In this document: positions 9,627 through 60,200 of the stretch, one piece after another
Position numbering within the stretch: the stretch's first letter is position 1
How the letters are laid out: every line of letters begins with the position of its first letter
Translations under genes and position numbers: made by a program
DNA from: Podarcis pityusensis
Taxonomy: Eukaryota
DNA: 64,000 bases
Strand: one strand, 5' to 3'
NCBI GenBank assembly: GCA_964106645.2
Contig: OZ067041.1
The notes under the pieces: generated by a model
The model's database searches: none
Told to the model about the DNA's origin: nothing
The model's input: only the letters and a program-made list of their open reading frames with translations

Positions 9627-9983
9627 GGGACGCGGGTGGCACTGTGGGTTAAACCACAGAGCCTAGGACTTGCCGATCAGAAGGTCGGCGGTTTGAATCC
9701 CCGTGACGGGGTGCGCTCCCGTTGCTCGGTCCCTGCTCCTGCCAACCTAGCAGTTCGAAAGCACGTCAAAGTGCAAGTAGATAAATAGGTACCGCTGCAG
9801 CGGGAAGGTAAACGGCGTTTCCGTGCGCTGCTCTGGTTCGCCAGAAGCGGCTTAGTCATGCTGGACACATGACCCGGAGGCTGTACGCCGGCTCCCTCAG
9901 CCAATAAAGCAAGATGAGCGCCGCAACCCCAGAGTCGGCCACGACTGGACCTAATGGTCATGGGTCCCTTTACCTTTACCTTT
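9627..9983 (+). mobile_element. Sauria SINE, full length, inside L1
   Basis: GGGACGCGGGTGGC start, (ACCTTT)n tail, 14-bp TSD TATGAATCATTTTG at 9612-9625 and 9984-9997. Confidence 0.94.
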
Positions 9984-24009: not shown

Positions 24010-24410
24010 GCCCAGAGGAGGACAACAACAATTTCCAGGTGCAGACCTTGCTAATCGAGTCAAATGAAGAAAGGTTGAAGGAACTGTATATGATTAAGAT
24101 CATATCACCAATGGGCATCTTCAGATGAAGGTTTGTCACATAGATGGCAGAGCTTTTTGTTTGTTTGTTTTTTGCAGCTCCAAAGGGTAGGACTAATGGA
24201 TTCGAATTACAGGAAATGGATTTGCACCAAACATTAGGAAGAACTTATTGACAATGAAAGCCATTCAACAGCAGAACAGACCCTTCTTAGAAGGCCTCCC
24301 GTTCCTTAGAGGTTTTAAGTAGAGGTTGGATGGCAAGAATGCATTTTCTGCACTGAACTGACAGTGGAGTTGGAATAGATGACCTTAGAGATCCCACTCT
24401 GTGATTCTAA
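24010..24410 (+). mobile_element. CR1 3' fragment
   Basis: ACATTAGGAAGAACTT..., CCTTAGAGGTTTTAAGTAGAGGTTGGATGG, tail CTCTGTGATTCT. Confidence 0.75.
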
Positions 24411-24430
24411 ACAACCCATCTTTGGGATTA

Positions 24431-24757
24431 AGTAAAGGTAAAGGGACCCCTGACCATTAGGTCCAGTCGTGACCCACTCTGGGGTTGCAGCACTCATCTC
24501 GCTTTACTGGCTGAGGGAGCTGGTGTACAGCTTCTGGGTCATGTGGCCAGCATGACTAAGCCACTTCTGGCGAACCAGAGCAGCGCATGAAAACGCCGTT
24601 TACCTTCCCACCAGAGCGGTACCTATTTATCTACTTGCACTTGACGTGCTTTCGAACTGCTAGGTTGGCAGGAGCAGGGACCGAGCAACGGGGATTCGAA
24701 CCACCGACCTTCTGATCAGCAAGCCCTAGGCTCTGTGGTTTAGACCACAGTGCCACC
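24431..24757 (-). mobile_element. Sauria SINE with small internal deletion
   Basis: Consensus match; lacks the GAGCTCACCCCGTCGC segment that lies between CGGG repeats in other copies. Confidence 0.9.
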
Positions 24758-25654: not shown

Positions 25655-26203
25655 AAACTAATGCTATTCTAAGATGCATCAACAGAGGTATAGTGTCCAG
25701 ATCAAGGGAAGTAATAGTACCACTCTATTCTGCCTTAGTCAGACCACACTTGGAATACTGTGTCCAAGGCTGGGCACCACGATTTAAGAAGGATGTTGAC
25801 AAGCTGGAACATGTGCAGAAGAGAGCAACCAAGATGAGCAAGGTTGTGGAAGCAGCCTTATGAGAAGTGCTTGAAGGAGCTGGGTATGTTTAGCCTGGAA
25901 AAGAGACTGAGAGGAGATATGATAGTCATCTTCAGATATCTTAAGGGCTGTCACATGGAGGAGGGAACATGTTTGTTTTCTCCTGCTCTGGAGGGTAGGA
26001 CTCGAACCAATGGCTTTAAGTTACAAGAAAGGAGATTCTGACTAAACATTTGGAAAAACTTCTTGACAGTAAGAGCTGTTCAGCAGTGGAACAGACTCCC
26101 AAGAGGTGGTGGACTCTCCTTCCTTGGAGGTTTTTAAACAGAATTTGGATGGTCATCTGTCATGGATTCTGGGATTCTTGCACTGCAGGGGATTCTATGA
26201 TTC
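25655..26203 (+). mobile_element. CR1 LINE 3' fragment
   Basis: [45 protein letters not shown]; tail GATTCTATGATTCT. Confidence 0.9.
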
Positions 26204-34589: not shown

Positions 34590-34929
34590 GGACCCCTGAC
34601 CGTCAGGTCCAGTCGCGGATGACTCTGGGGGTGTGGCACTCATCTTGTTTTATTGGCCGAGGGAGCCGGCGTACAGCTCCCGGGTCATGTGGCCAGCATG
34701 ACTAAGCCACTTCTGGCGAACCAGAGCAGCACACAGAAATGCTGTTTACCTTCCCGCCGGAGCGGTACCTATTTATCTACTTGCACTTGACGTGCTTTCG
34801 AACTGCTAGGTTGGCAGGAGCAGGGACCGAGCAATGGGAGCTCACCCCGTCGCGGGGATTCGAACCGCTAACCTTCTGATCGGCAAGCCCTAGGCTCTGT
34901 GGTTTAGACTACAGCGTCACCTGTGTCCC
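34590..34929 (-). mobile_element. Sauria SINE lacking its ACCTTT tail, flanked by microsatellites
   Basis: Consensus body; (TA)n at the tail side and (TACA)n(CA)n at the head side. Confidence 0.9.
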
Positions 34930-54203: not shown

Positions 54204-54546
54204 CAGTGGTGCCCTGCAAGACGAATGCCTCGCAAGACGAAAAACCCGCTAGACGAAAGGGTTTTCCGTTTTTCGATGCGCTTCGCAGGAGAATTTCCCT
54301 ATGGGCTTGCTTCGCAAGACGAAAATGTCTTGCGAGTCTTGAGATTTTTTTCGCTTCCTCCCCCTTTTTCTAAGCCGCTAAGCTGCTAATAGCCTTTTAG
54401 CCGCTAAGCCTTTAATAGCCGCTAAACCGCTAATAGCGCTAATCTGCTAAGCCGCTAAGACATACAGCGGTGCCTCGCAAGACGAAAAAACCGCTAGACG
54501 AAGAGACTCGCGGAACGGATTAATTTCGTCTTGCGAGGCACCGCTG
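54204..54546. mobile_element. Tigger-like MITE, family C, with internal GCCGCTAA tandem repeats
   Basis: TA|CAGTGGTGCCCTGCAAGACGAA ... TTCGTCTTGCGAGGCACCGCTG|TA. Confidence 0.88.
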
Positions 54547-56030
54547 TATGTCTTTCATAATCCCTGTTCATCAAGTATATTCAGAAGCAGTTAAAATGCT
54601 TCTGTTCAGGTATTTTGTGGCTTTCAAAGAGCTTACTCCCATGTGATAGGTCTGACAGAATGATTTGCTTGTCAGTGTGGAGACTCCAATGCTAATAGAG
54701 AACTTCTCCATTCACTTCTACAGATAGGATTTGTCCATCGCTCATGAATGAAGAAAACAGGTCATCATTCTTTATTTTTATACACCTCTATTGTAACTGT
54801 TTATACTTAGGAGCTGCAACTATGCGCCACCTCTTCTTAAATTGCTTCCTGGTAGAGTTGGCACTTCTTCTTTTTCTGCCCCTGATCTTGTACACATAAC
54901 AGCTACCATACAGGGGGGAAATTATCTAGGTGAATAATTGTTTCAACACATAATGACTGCATCGACTGCCAGCATTAAAAAATGAAAAGCACTTTTCTTT
55001 TTAACATTTCCAATCATAATAAGGTTCTCTAGATTATAAATTCCCATGATGTAATTCTGTTTGCAACACATGCTCAGAGATGGGGCAGAGGGAAGGATGC
55101 ACAACCAAGGGTGCATAGAGAAGAATATGGGCAATGGAGTCACATGTGAGAAAAGCTTGCTTGCCGCTGGGAACGAGGATTGGCCAAAAGCCACATTGAA
55201 AAGGTGGGCTTTGTGGAAGGGAGACAGGTGGTACCATGTACATGTTCAGGGGGACAGTAAGCCATGGGGTTGTGCTCCCGGTCCCCATTGGATATAAATC
55301 CAGTCATCCCCATAGCCAGATTAAAGCAGTTTGCAACTCTGTTCTTAATGTCTTCAAAGTGTTTCCTTGTAAGCACCCTATTTTTCACCAGGCTATTTCC
55401 AGCATGTATCTTGACTTGTGAATTGATCAAAAACATTGAAAAATTGATCGGAGCAGTGTGAAAATTGCCTTATATGATCCGTCGGGGGAACAGTAAAACA
55501 GCTGCTGCTTAACACTCCTGGAGGATAATGATATATTTTTTTCCACACTAGGGGATACTTAATGTTGGTAAAGTGCTCGGTAATGGGCATGATCCAGCCA
55601 ACACAAAGCTCTAAAATGGGGACCGAGGCTGAAGCAGCCTAGGATCTGTTGGATCCTGAACTAGCCCCACAGCTGTCATGTGATGGCATTGGCCTGATCA
55701 TTTCAACAACTCCAGGCTAGTACAGTAGTTTGCCATCCCTGCCGCCCCCAACCTTTTGCTTCACCCGGGATGGCAGGGCTGTGGTAGTAGCCCCACTGCT
55801 CAGTTATGCCCCACTGGGCGGTTCCGGGGTTTGGATTAGACCCTAAAACATCATTACTTAAAAGAAGAAACAGAGCAGTGATACCCAGTAGACAGAACCA
55901 TGGTTCGCACCTGTTCATCAGTAGCTGGGCATTAAAGCTTTCTTCTCGGGGCAAAGACTGTAGAGAGGAATGGTAGTAGTTTGCTGCTGAAGTTGCTGCT
56001 GGAATAAACTACTGATACTTGAAAAGATAC

Positions 56031-56068: not shown

Positions 56069-56665
56069 TAATAATGATTTGGGAGACAATATCCTTCTAC
56101 TGTACCTTGCAGCTACTAGTAACTAGGGATCTATTTGGTGTCAAGGAAAGCCAGTAATGTGAATTGGCCCTTAAAAAGTGCAACCTGCCCTATTCACCTC
56201 ACATCATGCCGTGTGGTGACTAATTATGTTGTCAAAAAGCCTGACATTTTCCCAAGACTGCTGCAAAATGGGTTCTTGACATACAAGCTGCAATTCTCAA
56301 TGGGATGACAGACGTGTGCTGGGGCAATCGTGGCCACTGAATCTTACTGTGTGTGAGAGAGAGATAGTTGTGAGGAGAGAATATTTTTTGAAAAACTTTA
56401 CTTAAATGCAAAGGTCACGGTGGGAAATACAGTTCAGTTAAAGTTGCAGGAATAAATGGAGAAGTGAGTGGTTTATTTCTCCCGGCAGTGTTGTTTTATT
56501 AGACTTGAGAACTGTGTAGTCCCCAGTTCCACAATTATGGAGCTTGGTGTTGGACTGAGAATTAAGCAACCTAAGACTCTTCACCACATGTGTTTTTGTA
56601 TGTGTATATTCTAGTATGAGAAGCAAAGGCCTGGGCTGGAAATACTGGCTGGGTAAGTATAGCTT

Positions 56666-57010
56666 GGGACACGGGTGCCACTGTGGGTTAAACCACAGAG
56701 CCTAGGGCTTGCCGATCAGAAGGTTAGCAGTTCGAATCTCCGTGACGGGGTGAGCTCCCGTTGCTCGGTCCCTGCTCCTGCCAACCTAGCAGTTCGAAAG
56801 CACATCAAAGTGCAAGTAGATAAATAGGTACTGCTCCAGCGGGAAGGTAAACGGTGTTTCCGTGCGCTGGTCTGGTTCGCCAGAAGCGGCTTTGTCATGC
56901 TGGCCACATGACCCGGAAGCTGTACACCGGCTCCCTCAGCCAATAAAGCAAGATGAGCGCCGCAACCCCAGAGTCGGCCACGACTGGACCTAATGGTCAG
57001 GGGTCCCTTT
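56666..57010 (+). mobile_element. Sauria SINE without repeated tail (5' part of a chimera)
   Basis: Full head and body ending GGGGTCCCTTT. Confidence 0.92.
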
Positions 57011-57202
57011 TCCTGACAGTAAGAGCTGTTTGACAGTGGAATTTGCTGTCAAGGAGTGTGGTGGAGTCTCCTTCTTTGGAGGTCTTTAAGCAGAGGTTTG
57101 ACAACCATATGTCAGGAGTACTCTGATGGTGTTTCCTGCTTGGCAGGGGGTTGGACTCGATGGCCCTTGTGGTCTCTTCCAACTCTATGATTCTATGATT
57201 CT
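57010..57202 (+). mobile_element. CR1 3' end (3' part of the chimera)
   Basis: TTCCTGACAGTAAGAGCTGTT...TTGGAGGTCTTTAAGCAGAGG...CCAACTCTATGATTCTATGATTCT; homologous to 26060-26203. Confidence 0.9.
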
Positions 57203-60200
57203 TTTTAAGTATGGCTTGAGTGTCCTACATTGGGGTCAGCAGAAGGTAAATCAGAATCTACTGGTAGATAACTCAGTGATTAGAAGTAGATCAAAAAGGA
57301 TTTCTGACTCCCAGGTTGTTGTTTTTTTAAATAATGATAAGAACAAAATGATTCTTCCCCTGTCTCTCATTCAGATATTTCCTGGAAGCAAAAAACCCCA
57401 CAACTGTGATGTATGTACCTTCTTGTATGTTTTGCTTATGTGAAAATTAGGGTATTTCGTTCTTAAGCTTAGAAGTAACAATGTTGTGACTATTTTGTCA
57501 TGTAAAACTGAAAAAAAGAGAAAATAGTGTGTGCAAAGTTTTTCTTTAGCCAATATGATTTTTTAAAACTCCTTATTTGTCACTTCTACTAGAGATTGTT
57601 TCTACTGCAGTTGACTTGAGCCTAGCTTTTATGACATCATTATCTAACTCATTTTCCATTGATTATTTCACAGCATCATGTCCTTGATGGACAGCTGACA
57701 TTTTATAAGAGTTACCTATTCAGCCTTAGGGACTCAGCAGAACTTCAGTGGAACTCAAGCACCACATAGGGTGCAAGTTGGTTTTCTTTCCTTTTTTTGC
57801 AAGACTGAGCAAAGCTGAATGCAAATTATACTGAACTATTTAAACTTTTATGTATATGTTTCGTTTCCAGGCCAATTCTATATATACATTTCCATCAATG
57901 ATTGTCTGCCTGCTCAAAAACTATTGCGTATACATTAACAATTGTATATAAACACACAAAGTAATCAAAATAAACTTAAAATATCTTTCTTTTTTCCCCC
58001 CTGCTAATCCACGTGTTACTTTATTATTTGCATCTTATTTTTCTTTATATATAAAGCTGTGGCCTTTGATTTTGAAGTCCCAGTTGATATTAAAGCTGTT
58101 CTTAGTCTATTGCCCTTTAACAAATGTTTAGTTTGTTTTTTGATGTGTTTCCTGAAGCATGATTACATCTACCTTCTCTTTATATAACCTAAGAAAAAAA
58201 CCTGGTAACAGTGTTACTCAGCCCTTTCACAGTCACAGATACTATTTAGATGCTGTTTATCTTGGGGGGAGGAATTCAAGTACTTTATTAATTCACAGAT
58301 TAAAATTATGAATACTTTCAGATTAGAACATTTTCTGAATTAAAATTGCAAAATAATGGCAATATTTCCACCAAGTGAAGTGAAGTTTGGGGTTTGCTCT
58401 GCTCATTTAAAAAAAAATGATAAACTGCTTTATACAGCAGACGTACTGATCTTGTGGTTTTGCTAAGCATACCAATGGCTTCTCTTTTGGAGCTAGCACT
58501 TGCATGGCGTAGTTGAAATTCTATGCTGTCTCAGAAGCAAAGCAAAAAGCAATGAATACCATTAGAAGCAAGAGACAATACTTAGATTAATTTCCTGGCA
58601 GCTCCTGTGTTCTCCCAGGCCAAGGGCATGTCCCCAGTGCCGTTCCTATCTCTTTCACCTCAGAGAAGCAGTGGCTACAGAACCAGACAAGTGCCCTTTA
58701 AGGAGCACTGCCAATTTCCTCCGGTAGGTGGGGCAAACTGGAGAACAGCCTTCAGGAGGCTATAACTCAGAGACAGGGAAACTGTGGCCCTCCAGATTTT
58801 TGTGACGCAAAAGCCAACATGGCTGACTGCCAGAATTGATAGGAGTTGTCATCCAACAGCACCTACAACAGGTGGGGGGAGCCTCTTTGTCTACACAGGC
58901 AAGATGCTTATAAAAATTCCACTCATAGTCCAAATTCGACAGATGGATGGAGCATCCCACATGTCAGTCACATGCCACTTGGGAACCTGCAATAGCTTCA
59001 AAACCCTTTCACTGTTTCCAAAGGGCTGTAACATAGTGCCTGCACTCCTGTGTGAGCCTCCAGAGCATCAAATAGGAGTGGGGTTGTCTGCCTGAAAGCC
59101 CTTTGCAAAAGCTGTCTTTGAACATTGCTTGAGATATGTTTAAAGGTGGGGAGTCTGCTTCAAACAGCAATTTTGCTAGGCTCCCCGTGCTCTTGCCTGA
59201 GGCTACAGAAGTGCTCTTTGAAGCAGCATGAGTGATGTTAAAAGGAGGGGGACATTGCATCAAAGGACCCTCTGTCAGAAGCACTGGGACTATCGTAAAG
59301 TGCTTGGCAAAAGCTCTCTTTGAAGCATCTCTACACGTTTCCTTTAAGTGGGCAGGGGAGAAGAGAAAGAAGCCTCCATTCTACAGGCTTCTTTGTGCTC
59401 TCCCCTACTTGCTCGCTTAAAGGAGAAGGCCCTGCCCATCAGTCGGTGTCACTAGTTACAGCTGGTGAGCAGGTAGGTGTAATTTGGGTGAAATGTCCTC
59501 ATGGACCAAATTGGACCACCTGGCAGACCAAGACTGGCCTGTGGGTGAGAGGTTCCCTACCTATGACCCAGAAGGGTCACAGGTTCCCCATTCCTGGTTT
59601 AGTCCTTTGCCGAGACAACACATCTCTTTTGCCTGCAATAGGGAGAGAGCTGTATCTAGCAGATATCGCTAGGAACTCTCCATGGTCCTGATAGCTTTCA
59701 TGAAACTGGACATATTTGGCCAACATTCTTTGGAACCTGGCATTCTTTGGAACCTCTCCTTCTAAATGTAACATACTAGGAAAGGCAAGAGTTGAACAAG
59801 CACCTAGTAGTAGGTCACACTCTTCCAAGCACAGTGTGCAGATCCTCCGTCTGCAAGAACTGAAATTCATGATCCCAAACTAGATGATACTCTGGACATA
59901 TCCCTAGTCTGAACTACTGAACTTGTGGGGTTGTGGCTGAGATGGATACAAGCAACATAATCTGAAGAGTGATTAGCAAACATGTCTCAATGGGCTTCTG
60001 TCTTCTTACCAAATACTTCTCTTCCTCTGCAATGTACCCAACTTCACCCTGGTTTTCCCACTGCGCCATCAGAGCCTTCACTGGTTGGTACACTTCCACA
60101 ATGGAATAAATTGACTATGCCAGTGTCCCATTACATTCTACTAGTCTAAGGGCATTTAATACCAATTCTATCTCACCAAGTAGGCATAACTTAATGATAG

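What the first reader, a model, noticed from the sequence alone, without database searches (positions are those of the whole stretch)
56654..57218. Sauria SINE-CR1 chimeric retroposon bounded by a single target-site duplication
Seen: a complete Sauria SINE (56666-57010) lacks its usual (ACCTTT)n tail and joins directly, in the same orientation and through a T-rich microhomology, to ~190 bp of CR1 3' end with an (ATTCTATG)-type tail. One 13-bp near-perfect duplication flanks the whole unit: TAAGTATAGCTTG (56654-56666) and TAAGTATGGCTTG (57206-57218). Known: Sauria SINEs share their tail with BovB and are thought to be BovB-mobilised; U6-L1 chimeras arise by template switching. Inference: this is one integration in which a CR1 RT primed on CR1 RNA and switched to SINE RNA, or else a composite SINE that changed LINE partner. 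The TTTT at the junction (57008-57011) could terminate Pol III, which favours a one-off template switch.
Basis: partly seen in the sequence, partly recalled or inferred. Interest (0 to 1): 0.8.

Follow-up and report, generated by a model that had tools for sequence, protein, structure and literature searches.

The report
CR1 fragment abutting a Sauria SINE
A lizard SINE is joined directly to the tail end of a CR1 jumping gene inside one 13-base target duplication, but this looks more like a CR1 landing in the SINE's T-rich tail than a one-step hybrid, so it is probably ordinary.

Summary
A full-length Sauria SINE body (56666-57010) lacks (ACCTTT)n repeats. It abuts, in the same orientation and with no spacer, 192 bp of CR1 3' end (57011-57202) with the ORF2 C-terminus, hairpin and octamer tail. 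A 12/13 duplication flanks the pair; none of 63,204 control positions shows the like.

The one-step reading (CR1 reverse transcriptase switching from CR1 RNA to SINE RNA) is not shown. Every feature also fits two ordinary events: a Bov-B-mobilised SINE insertion, then a 5'-truncated CR1 landing in the SINE's short T-rich tail.

Four points favour two events:
- The outer duplication is 13 bp and starts with TA, the Bov-B/Sauria habit (4 of 5 other SINE copies here). Bird CR1s are reported to make no duplication.
- TCCT left of the CR1 and TTT right of it together rebuild about one ACCTTT tail unit.
- The junction lies in the first tail unit, not at the end of a SINE transcript.
- One contig of a related species stops aligning exactly where the CR1 tail begins.

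Ages of the two halves are indistinguishable. I found no second copy of the junction. Four related species share the SINE's 5' junction. My odds are about 0.6 two events, 0.25 template switch and 0.04 new SINE family. The scan had not noted this structure elsewhere.

The parts
56654..56666 (+). 5' copy of the target-site duplication, TAAGTATAGCTTG. The last G is shared with the SINE's first G.
   Evidence: 12/13 match to 57206-57218; 0 of 63,204 control positions show such a repeat.
56666..57010 (+). Full-length Sauria SINE body, ending ...GGGGTCCCTTT, with no recognisable (ACCTTT)n repeats.
   Evidence: 345-bp end-to-end matches to copies at 9627, 46756, 6646 and others, 76-94% identity; eight of the nine other copies carry ACCTTT-type tails; 15 majority differences from genome-wide contigs, 11 of them at CpG.
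57010..57014 (+). Junction overlap TTCCT. It fits the CR1 consensus (C|TTCCT|GACAG) fully and the SINE tail (TTT-ACCT) at 4 of 5 positions. 57011 = T is the CR1 state.
   Evidence: loose ends: ordinary SINE copies align to 57014 and then read TTACCTTT; CR1 copies read ...AGGAAGAAC before 57010; the CR1 copy at 26040-26070 reads AACTTCTTGACAGTAAGAG.
57011..57202 (+). 5'-truncated CR1 LINE 3' end: last 39 codons of ORF2 (57010-57126, in-frame TGA at 57031-57033), 3' UTR hairpin (57148-57185) and octamer tail (57184-57202).
   Evidence: translation matches another CR1 copy; hairpin; TCTATGAT x2.4; only 3 majority differences (57049, 57097, 57120).
57203..57205 (+). TTT between the CR1 octamer tail and the 3' duplication copy. 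Read as a remnant of the SINE's ACCTTT tail under the two-event reading; unexplained under the one-step reading.
   Evidence: sequence; other CR1 copies continue ATGATT after 57202.
57206..57218 (+). 3' copy of the target-site duplication, TAAGTATGGCTTG.

Best explanation
This is two ordinary retroposition events at one spot.

First, a Sauria SINE was integrated by the Bov-B LINE machinery at ...GGCTGGG|TAAGTATRGCTTG|AGTG. That made the 13-bp duplication and left a short tail of about one unit (…CCCTTT-ACCTTT(T)-TAAG…).

Later, a CR1 element started target-primed reverse transcription at a nick in that T-run. It was copied for only about 190 nt. Its 5' end was joined back to the upstream DNA through the CCT/T microhomology in the tail, with at most a 2-bp (CT) duplication.

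Because the CR1 sits inside the SINE's tail, the SINE's own duplication brackets both elements and mimics a single integration.

Shown here: the anatomy, the reality and type of the duplication, and the shared SINE 5' junction in four species. Inferred: the order of events and the pre-CR1 tail sequence.
For: (1) The outer duplication is of the SINE's type. In this window the SINE duplications are 6-15 bp and 4 of 5 begin with TA; this one is 13 bp and begins with TA. TA makes up only 6.2% of dinucleotides here. The literature agrees: Sauria SINE duplications start with T followed by A (PMC13295347), and RTE-clade duplications are 7-15 bp (PMC6007223). [quoted passage not shown]

(2) TCCT (57011-57014) to the left of the CR1 and TTT (57203-57205) to its right together rebuild roughly one ACCTTT unit in front of the duplication. 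That is the arrangement seen in ordinary copies, whose tails here run 3-18 nt.

(3) The junction lies in the first tail unit, not at the end of a tailed SINE transcript.

(4) The contig of organism E (X9 record 32) aligns from 57480 leftwards only to 57201. Its 17 further letters do not align to the CR1 octamer. This would be expected if that haplotype reads ...ACC-TTTTT-AAG with no CR1.

(5) Chance alone makes such nesting plausible. SINE tail zones cover about 0.16% of this window, and squamate genomes hold on average about 370,000 CR1 copies (PMC11303007). By my rough estimate that gives tens to hundreds of CR1-in-SINE-tail cases per genome.

(6) SINE ends abutting CR1 tail ends in the opposite orientation occur in 5-12 contigs per species (joints). 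A single reverse transcription cannot produce that arrangement, so independent SINE/CR1 tail adjacency is common.
Against: - Position 57011 is T (the CR1 state), not the SINE's A. The 5' join therefore lay at 57010/11 with loss of ACC, or a mismatched microhomology was resolved to the CR1 strand.
- The T-run is one T longer than a plain ACCTTT + TAAG reconstruction predicts.
- Non-CpG divergence of the two halves is the same (4/345 against 3/192), so nothing shows that the CR1 is younger.
- The duplication habits of CR1 in lizards were not measured here; the 'no duplication' statement comes from birds.
- No Tn run lies about 10 nt upstream of the duplication, so only half of the Bov-B 'Tn-TA' signature is present.
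- The organism E hint rests on alignment coordinates alone; the 17 letters could not be read.
Confidence: 0.62

Rival explanations
1. This is a one-step chimeric retrocopy. CR1 reverse transcriptase primed at the target on a CR1 RNA (octamer tail) and copied about 190 nt. It then switched template to a Sauria SINE RNA, guided by the T.CCT microhomology at the SINE's first tail unit, and copied it to its 5' end. One 13-bp duplication was made. This would be analogous to U6-L1 chimeras.
For: The anatomy matches the chimera template: a full-length Pol III-type element at the 5' side, a 5'-truncated LINE 3' end with its own tail, the same orientation, no spacer, and one duplication around both. 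Four of five positions are shared between donor and acceptor at the switch point, including the terminal one, and this reproduces the observed 57009 = T (SINE) and 57011 = T (CR1) (loose ends). The two halves are equally diverged from their family majorities. Template switching by non-L1 LINE enzymes is documented in Anolis: U6 chimeras with L1, L2, RTE and AnolisSINE2 (PMC4476161). It has been proposed for CR1 in the birth of PittSINE (PMC5729268). First-stage notes on this genome report several Pol III heads on one CR1 tail (unverified).
Against: - The duplication has the length and TA start of Bov-B/Sauria integrations, not what is reported for CR1.
- Three T between the octamer tail and the duplication have no source in the empty site (GGG|TAAG).
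- The acceptor was entered at the first tail unit, whereas such chimeras normally begin at the acceptor RNA's 3' end.
- No CR1 chimera was found among the Anolis U6 chimeras.
- A relative's haplotype possibly lacks the CR1 (record 32).
Confidence: 0.25
2. This is a member of a multi-copy composite SINE family, with a Sauria head and body plus a CR1 tail, that switched its LINE partner from Bov-B to CR1 and amplified.
For: Partner switching by tail exchange is well known for SINE superfamilies (PMC5729268). CR1-tailed SINEs with other heads are noted in this genome (unverified). The CR1 hairpin and octamer needed for recognition are intact.
Against: - The junction occurs once among 10 SINE copies in 64 kb, allowing 3 mismatches, and not at all in the metagenome scan.
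- In about 90,000-170,000 laid contigs per species, the reported loose ends at the junction are those of ordinary SINE tails and ordinary CR1 upstream sequence. No second bridging form was reported, though the output was truncated.
- T4 at 57008-57011 would impede Pol III read-through into the CR1 tail. This point rests on established knowledge and was not tested here.
- A 192-bp tail containing ORF2 codons is long for a SINE tail.
Confidence: 0.04
3. There were two independent insertions some distance apart, later brought together by a deletion. Alternatively, a SINE inserted at the 5' edge of an older CR1.
For: SINEs and CR1 fragments are dense here: 10 SINE copies and about 6 CR1 3' ends in 64 kb. 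Another CR1 tail lies 25 bp from an inverted SINE tail at 24396-24440.
Against: A deletion would have removed the SINE's 3' duplication copy, yet a 12/13 duplication abuts the outer ends exactly. A SINE inserting next to an older CR1 would bring its own tail and its own duplication, and neither is present.
Confidence: 0.03

Closest known systems
Nested retroposon insertions ('transposition in transposition'), here a CR1 inside the tail of a Sauria SINE
   Same: The host element's duplication encloses both elements. Host sequence (tail remnants) lies on both sides of the guest. The guest is a typical severely 5'-truncated CR1 with hairpin and octamer and at most a 2-bp duplication.
   Different: The guest sits within the last few nucleotides of the host. 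The remnants are therefore only 3-4 nt each and the structure imitates a chimera.
U6-L1 and other LINE-RT template-switch chimeras (Buzdin et al. 2002; Doucet et al. 2015, PMC4476161)
   Same: A full-length Pol III transcript copy is fused in sense to a 5'-truncated LINE 3' end, with one duplication around both.
   Different: The acceptor is another SINE rather than an snRNA. The LINE is CR1, for which no such chimera is documented in lizards. The junction is not at the acceptor's 3' end. The duplication type fits a different LINE (Bov-B).
CR1-mobilised SINEs born by head or tail exchange (TguSINE1/PittSINE, PMC5729268; tortoise Pol III/SINE-PsCR1; Deu- and V-SINEs with CR1 tails, PMC3747384)
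   Same: A Pol III-type head and body joined to a CR1 3' end carrying the hairpin and octamer that the CR1 enzyme is thought to recognise.
   Different: Those are amplified families with short tails. Here there is a single copy, a 192-bp tail that includes coding sequence, and a T4 at the junction.
Canonical Sauria SINE (Piskurek et al. 2006) with Bov-B-type tail
   Same: The 345-bp body is 76-94% identical to the other copies in the window. The duplication is 13 bp and starts with TA.
   Different: The (ACCTTT)n tail is interrupted or replaced.

Membership tests
Sauria SINE | Full-length body homologous to other copies | tested here: met
   345-bp end-to-end alignments to nine copies in the window, 76-94% identity.
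Sauria SINE | 3' tail of (ACCTTT)n directly followed by the target-site duplication | tested here: not met
   eight of the nine other copies have ACCTTT-type tails. Here CCCTTT is followed by TCCTGACAG (CR1). Only TCCT and, 190 bp later, TTT could be remnants.
Sauria SINE | tRNA-related Pol III head | tested here: inconclusive
   ARAGORN and Rfam find no tRNA in 56500-57350. The head is too diverged for these tools. Its tRNA origin rests on the literature.
Sauria SINE | Bov-B-type insertion signature (duplication of 7-15 bp starting with TA, with a Tn run about 10 nt upstream) | tested here: inconclusive
   The length (13 bp) and TA start are met (PMC13295347). No T-run lies about 10 nt upstream.
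CR1 LINE 3' end | ORF2 C-terminus, 3' UTR hairpin and (ATTCTRTG)n octamer tail | tested here: met
   translation; hairpin 57148-57185; array 57184-57202; thousands of genome-wide matches whose upstream continuation is CR1 ORF2 sequence.
LINE-RT template-switch chimera (U6-L1 type) | Full-length Pol III-type RNA copy fused in sense, without spacer, to a 5'-truncated LINE 3' end | tested here: met
LINE-RT template-switch chimera (U6-L1 type) | One duplication around both parts, of the kind made by the LINE whose tail primes the event (here CR1) | tested here: inconclusive
   The duplication is real, but its length and TA start match Bov-B/Sauria integrations. CR1 duplication habits in this lizard were not measurable in the window. 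Bird CR1s are reported to make none.
LINE-RT template-switch chimera (U6-L1 type) | Junction at the 3' end of the acceptor RNA | tested here: not met
   The SINE part stops at or within its first tail unit (57010-57014). Ordinary copies go on with TTACCTTT (loose ends).
LINE-RT template-switch chimera (U6-L1 type) | No intermediate (acceptor-only) state at the orthologous site | tested here: inconclusive
   four species share the SINE 5' junction. The contigs break inside the repeats. One contig of organism E does not align into the CR1 tail, but its letters were not shown.
Composite SINE family with CR1 tail | Many copies sharing the identical head-tail junction | tested here: not met
   One match in the window at up to 3 mismatches, none in metagenome contigs, and no second bridging form reported among the laid contigs (truncated output). 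A whole-genome search was not possible.
Nested insertion (CR1 in SINE tail) | Host sequence on both sides of the guest, with the host's duplication outermost | tested here: inconclusive
   The outermost duplication is of the host type. The remnants are only TCCT and TTT, too short to be proof, and TCCT is also CR1 consensus.

The most novel reading that the evidence does not exclude
This locus is a single-integration chimera made by a CR1 reverse transcriptase that jumped from CR1 RNA onto a heterologous, Bov-B-dependent SINE RNA at a 4-of-5 microhomology. It would be a 'caught in the act' example of how a SINE acquires a new LINE partner, and the first CR1 chimera of this kind in a lizard.
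Probability: 0.25. Interest if true: 0.55.

Novelty: already known. Interest (0 to 1): 0.22.

Why it matters
If this is a nested insertion, it matters mainly as a caution. A LINE fragment that lands in the last few bases of a SINE is enclosed by the SINE's duplication and looks exactly like a template-switch chimera. A single outer duplication therefore cannot be used alone to call such chimeras.

If the minority reading is right, the locus would be direct evidence for two things. CR1 enzymes would be shown to switch templates onto unrelated SINE RNAs. And it would show the raw material from which SINEs change LINE partners, which has so far been inferred only from finished families.

Tried and rejected
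- tRNA and Rfam scans of the SINE head and of the whole window found no tRNA-like hit. There are therefore no CR1-tailed tRNA-SINEs in the window from which to measure CR1-type duplications.
- An exact scan of metagenome contigs for the 27-nt junction gave 0 hits. This is uninformative, because lizard DNA is not expected there.
- I looked up four window ORFs that span or flank the junctions in the Logan/ENA gene index, hoping to fetch relatives' contigs. None is on record.
- I tried to read CR1 duplications from the five other CR1 3' ends in the window. All are old or have undefined 5' ends, so they are unusable.
- Age comparison of the two halves gives 4 against 3 non-CpG changes, which has no resolving power.
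- The joint '57014 to 57143, skips 128' was considered as a second SINE-CR1 fusion with another breakpoint. I rejected it as evidence. Its sides are only 21-22 nt, and ordinary CR1 copies read ...TTCCTGCATT-GCAGGGG, which can be mislaid on TTTCCT at 57009-57014.
- Ichiyanagi & Okada 2008 (CR1 duplication statistics) and Suh 2015 are not held in the paper library.
- A deletion-fusion origin and a SINE-into-CR1-edge origin are rejected on the intact outer duplication and the missing SINE tail and duplication.
Full report
**Observation**

The window has no N runs.

- Positions 56666-57010 are a full-length Sauria SINE body. BLAST within the window finds nine more copies, most of them aligned over all 345 bp at 86-94% identity.
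- Eight of these nine run from ...GGGGTCCCTTT into ACCTTT-type tail units and then into their own target-site duplications. The ninth, at 34590-34929, runs into an (AT)n tract.
- The copy under study instead continues TCCTGACAGTAAGAG.
- From 57010/11 to 57202 the sequence is a CR1 3' end. It translates to FLTVRAV*QWNLLSRSVVESPSLEVFKQRFDNHMSGVL*. This is the same ORF2 C-terminus as a longer CR1 copy at 25901-26149.
- It folds into the GGGGTTGGAC/CTTCCAAC hairpin just upstream of the tail and ends in 2.4 units of TCTATGAT (57184-57202).
- TAAGTATAGCTTG (56654-56666) and TAAGTATGGCTTG (57206-57218) flank the pair. With the same geometry, none of 63,204 other positions in the window has a 12/13 flanking repeat.
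- The SINE by itself has no duplication.

**Fine structure of the junction**

I laid Logan contigs of four species (coded A, B, E and F; A is probably the source species) on 56400-57480 at 80% likeness. The loose ends define both family consensuses.

- Ordinary SINE copies align up to 57014 and then read TTACCTTT.
- CR1 copies read ...AGGAGATTCCAACTAAACATTAGGAAGAAC immediately before 57010. This is ORF2 sequence (RRFQLNIRKN-FLTVRAV).
- The SINE is therefore certain up to 57010 and the CR1 from 57011. Positions 57010-57014 (TTCCT) fit the CR1 fully and the SINE's first tail unit (T-ACCT) at four of five positions.
- After the octamer tail, other CR1 copies continue ATGATT. Here three T (57203-57205) precede the duplication.

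**Copy number and relatives**

- The SINE part attracts roughly 10^5-fold the single-copy word depth and the CR1 part roughly 4x10^4-fold (table 2). Both halves belong to very abundant families.
- The junction itself occurs once in the window, even allowing 3 mismatches, and not in metagenome contigs.
- The contig output, which was truncated, reported no second form bridging it.
- In all four species a single-copy contig runs from the unique 5' flank 23-35 nt into the SINE head (records 1, 9, 17 and 27). They differ from the window by 0, 7, 7 and 11 letters.
- The SINE's 5' junction is therefore shared by species about 2-4% diverged. The contigs break inside the repeats, so none spans the unit.
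- One 3'-side contig of organism E (record 32; depth 4.7, about half of that run's single-copy depth) aligns from 57480 back to 57201 and no further. It has 17 more letters on that side.
  - If the CR1 octamer were there, those letters should have aligned.
  - A SINE-only haplotype reading ...ACC-TTTTT-AAG would give exactly this picture.

**Ages**

I used the majority letters of the laid contigs as the family consensus.

- The SINE part differs at 15 sites. Eleven of these are at CpG; 10 of the consensus's 30 CpG dinucleotides have decayed.
- The CR1 part differs at 3 sites, none at CpG.
- Non-CpG divergence is 4/345 against 3/192.

The halves are equally old within very wide error. This does not separate one event from two.

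**Interpretation**

Three readings survive the anatomy.

(a) One step. A CR1 enzyme primes on CR1 RNA, copies about 190 nt and switches to SINE RNA.
- The 4-of-5 microhomology with a matched terminal base reproduces the observed letters, and the layout mirrors U6-L1 chimeras.
- Template switching by L1, L2 and RTE enzymes is documented in Anolis. No CR1 case was among them (PMC4476161).
- Template switching has been proposed for CR1 in PittSINE (PMC5729268).
- First-stage notes on this genome mention several Pol III heads on one CR1 tail (unverified).

(b) Two steps. The SINE is integrated by Bov-B with a short tail, then a 5'-truncated CR1 lands in that tail. The SINE's duplication then necessarily encloses both elements, so the single duplication is not diagnostic. 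Several details favour this reading.
- The duplication is 13 bp and starts with TA, like 4 of 5 other SINE duplications in the window (6-15 bp). It also matches the published Sauria/Bov-B signature. TA is only 6.2% of dinucleotides here.
- Bird CR1s are said to show no duplication, and L2-type chimeras have 1-9 bp.
- TCCT on the left and TTT on the right rebuild about one ACCTTT unit in front of TAAG. Under (a) the three T have no source, because the empty site reads GGG|TAAG.
- The SINE was entered at its first tail unit rather than at a transcript end.
- The organism E contig hint points the same way.
- Expectation: SINE tail zones are about 0.16% of this window, and squamates carry on average about 370,000 CR1 copies. 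Tens to hundreds of such nestings per genome are therefore expected by chance. One among the 654 windows scanned so far is unremarkable.

There is also evidence against (b).
- 57011 is T rather than the SINE's A. This needs a join at 57010/11 with loss of ACC, or resolution of a mismatched microhomology toward the CR1 strand.
- The T-run is one T too long.
- CR1 duplication habits in lizards were not measured.
- The upstream Tn half of the Bov-B signature is absent.

(c) An amplified Sauria-CR1 SINE family. There is no support for this. The T4 at 57008-57011 would hinder Pol III read-through; this point rests on established knowledge and was not tested.

A deletion-fusion origin, or a SINE inserting at the edge of an older CR1, is excluded by the intact outer duplication and the missing SINE tail and duplication.

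**Verdict**

My odds are about 0.62 for two events, 0.25 for a one-step chimera, 0.04 for a family and the rest for other origins.

The structure is real but most likely an ordinary nested insertion that imitates a chimera. The decisive data are a SINE-only orthologue, a genome-wide junction census and the CR1 duplication profile in this genome. None could be obtained here.

The reads call used 1,081 letters. No N stretch was involved.

Noticed in passing
window 57014 / 57202 (joints table): In each of the four species, 5-12 contigs join a Sauria SINE 3' end (…ACCT) directly to the end of a CR1 octamer tail on the opposite strand (tail to tail). This suggests that Sauria SINEs often integrate into the TA-containing reverse complement of the CR1 octamer, or the reverse. 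A single reverse transcription cannot make this arrangement.
   Followed up: no
window 57240-57325: The 3' flank, starting about 25 bp after the duplication, has 7-27 times single-copy word depth in all four species. It carries majority differences at 57270-57282. This is an unidentified low-copy repeat fragment; the 5' flank is single-copy.
   Followed up: no
window 24369-24440: A CR1 hairpin and degenerate octamer (…ACTCTGTGATTCT) is followed after 25 bp by the tail of an inverted Sauria SINE (24440-24757, minus strand). This is another close SINE/CR1 tail neighbourhood.
   Followed up: partly
window 34590-34929 (minus strand): This Sauria SINE copy ends at …GGGGTCC with no ACCTTT tail, directly against an (AT)n tract and next to a (TATG)n tract. 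It is a second tail-less copy, probably through microsatellite expansion or deletion.
   Followed up: no
window 57031-57033: There is an in-frame TGA inside the CR1 ORF2 C-terminus (FLTVRAV*QWN). The contig majority shown listed no alternative letter there, so the stop may be shared by the abundant subfamily. Nine rows of that table were hidden.
   Followed up: no
window 56430-56544 in run X9 (records 25 and 26): Organism E shows two contigs (depth 4.9 and 6.8) over the same unique 5' flank, differing at several sites. That individual is heterozygous across the locus, so a presence/absence polymorphism of the CR1 could be looked for in it.
   Followed up: no
window 54456-54554 (+): Weak Rfam match to the mir-2804 precursor (36 bits, E = 0.0014, far below the gathering score of 86). 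It is probably a repeat-derived hairpin.
   Followed up: no
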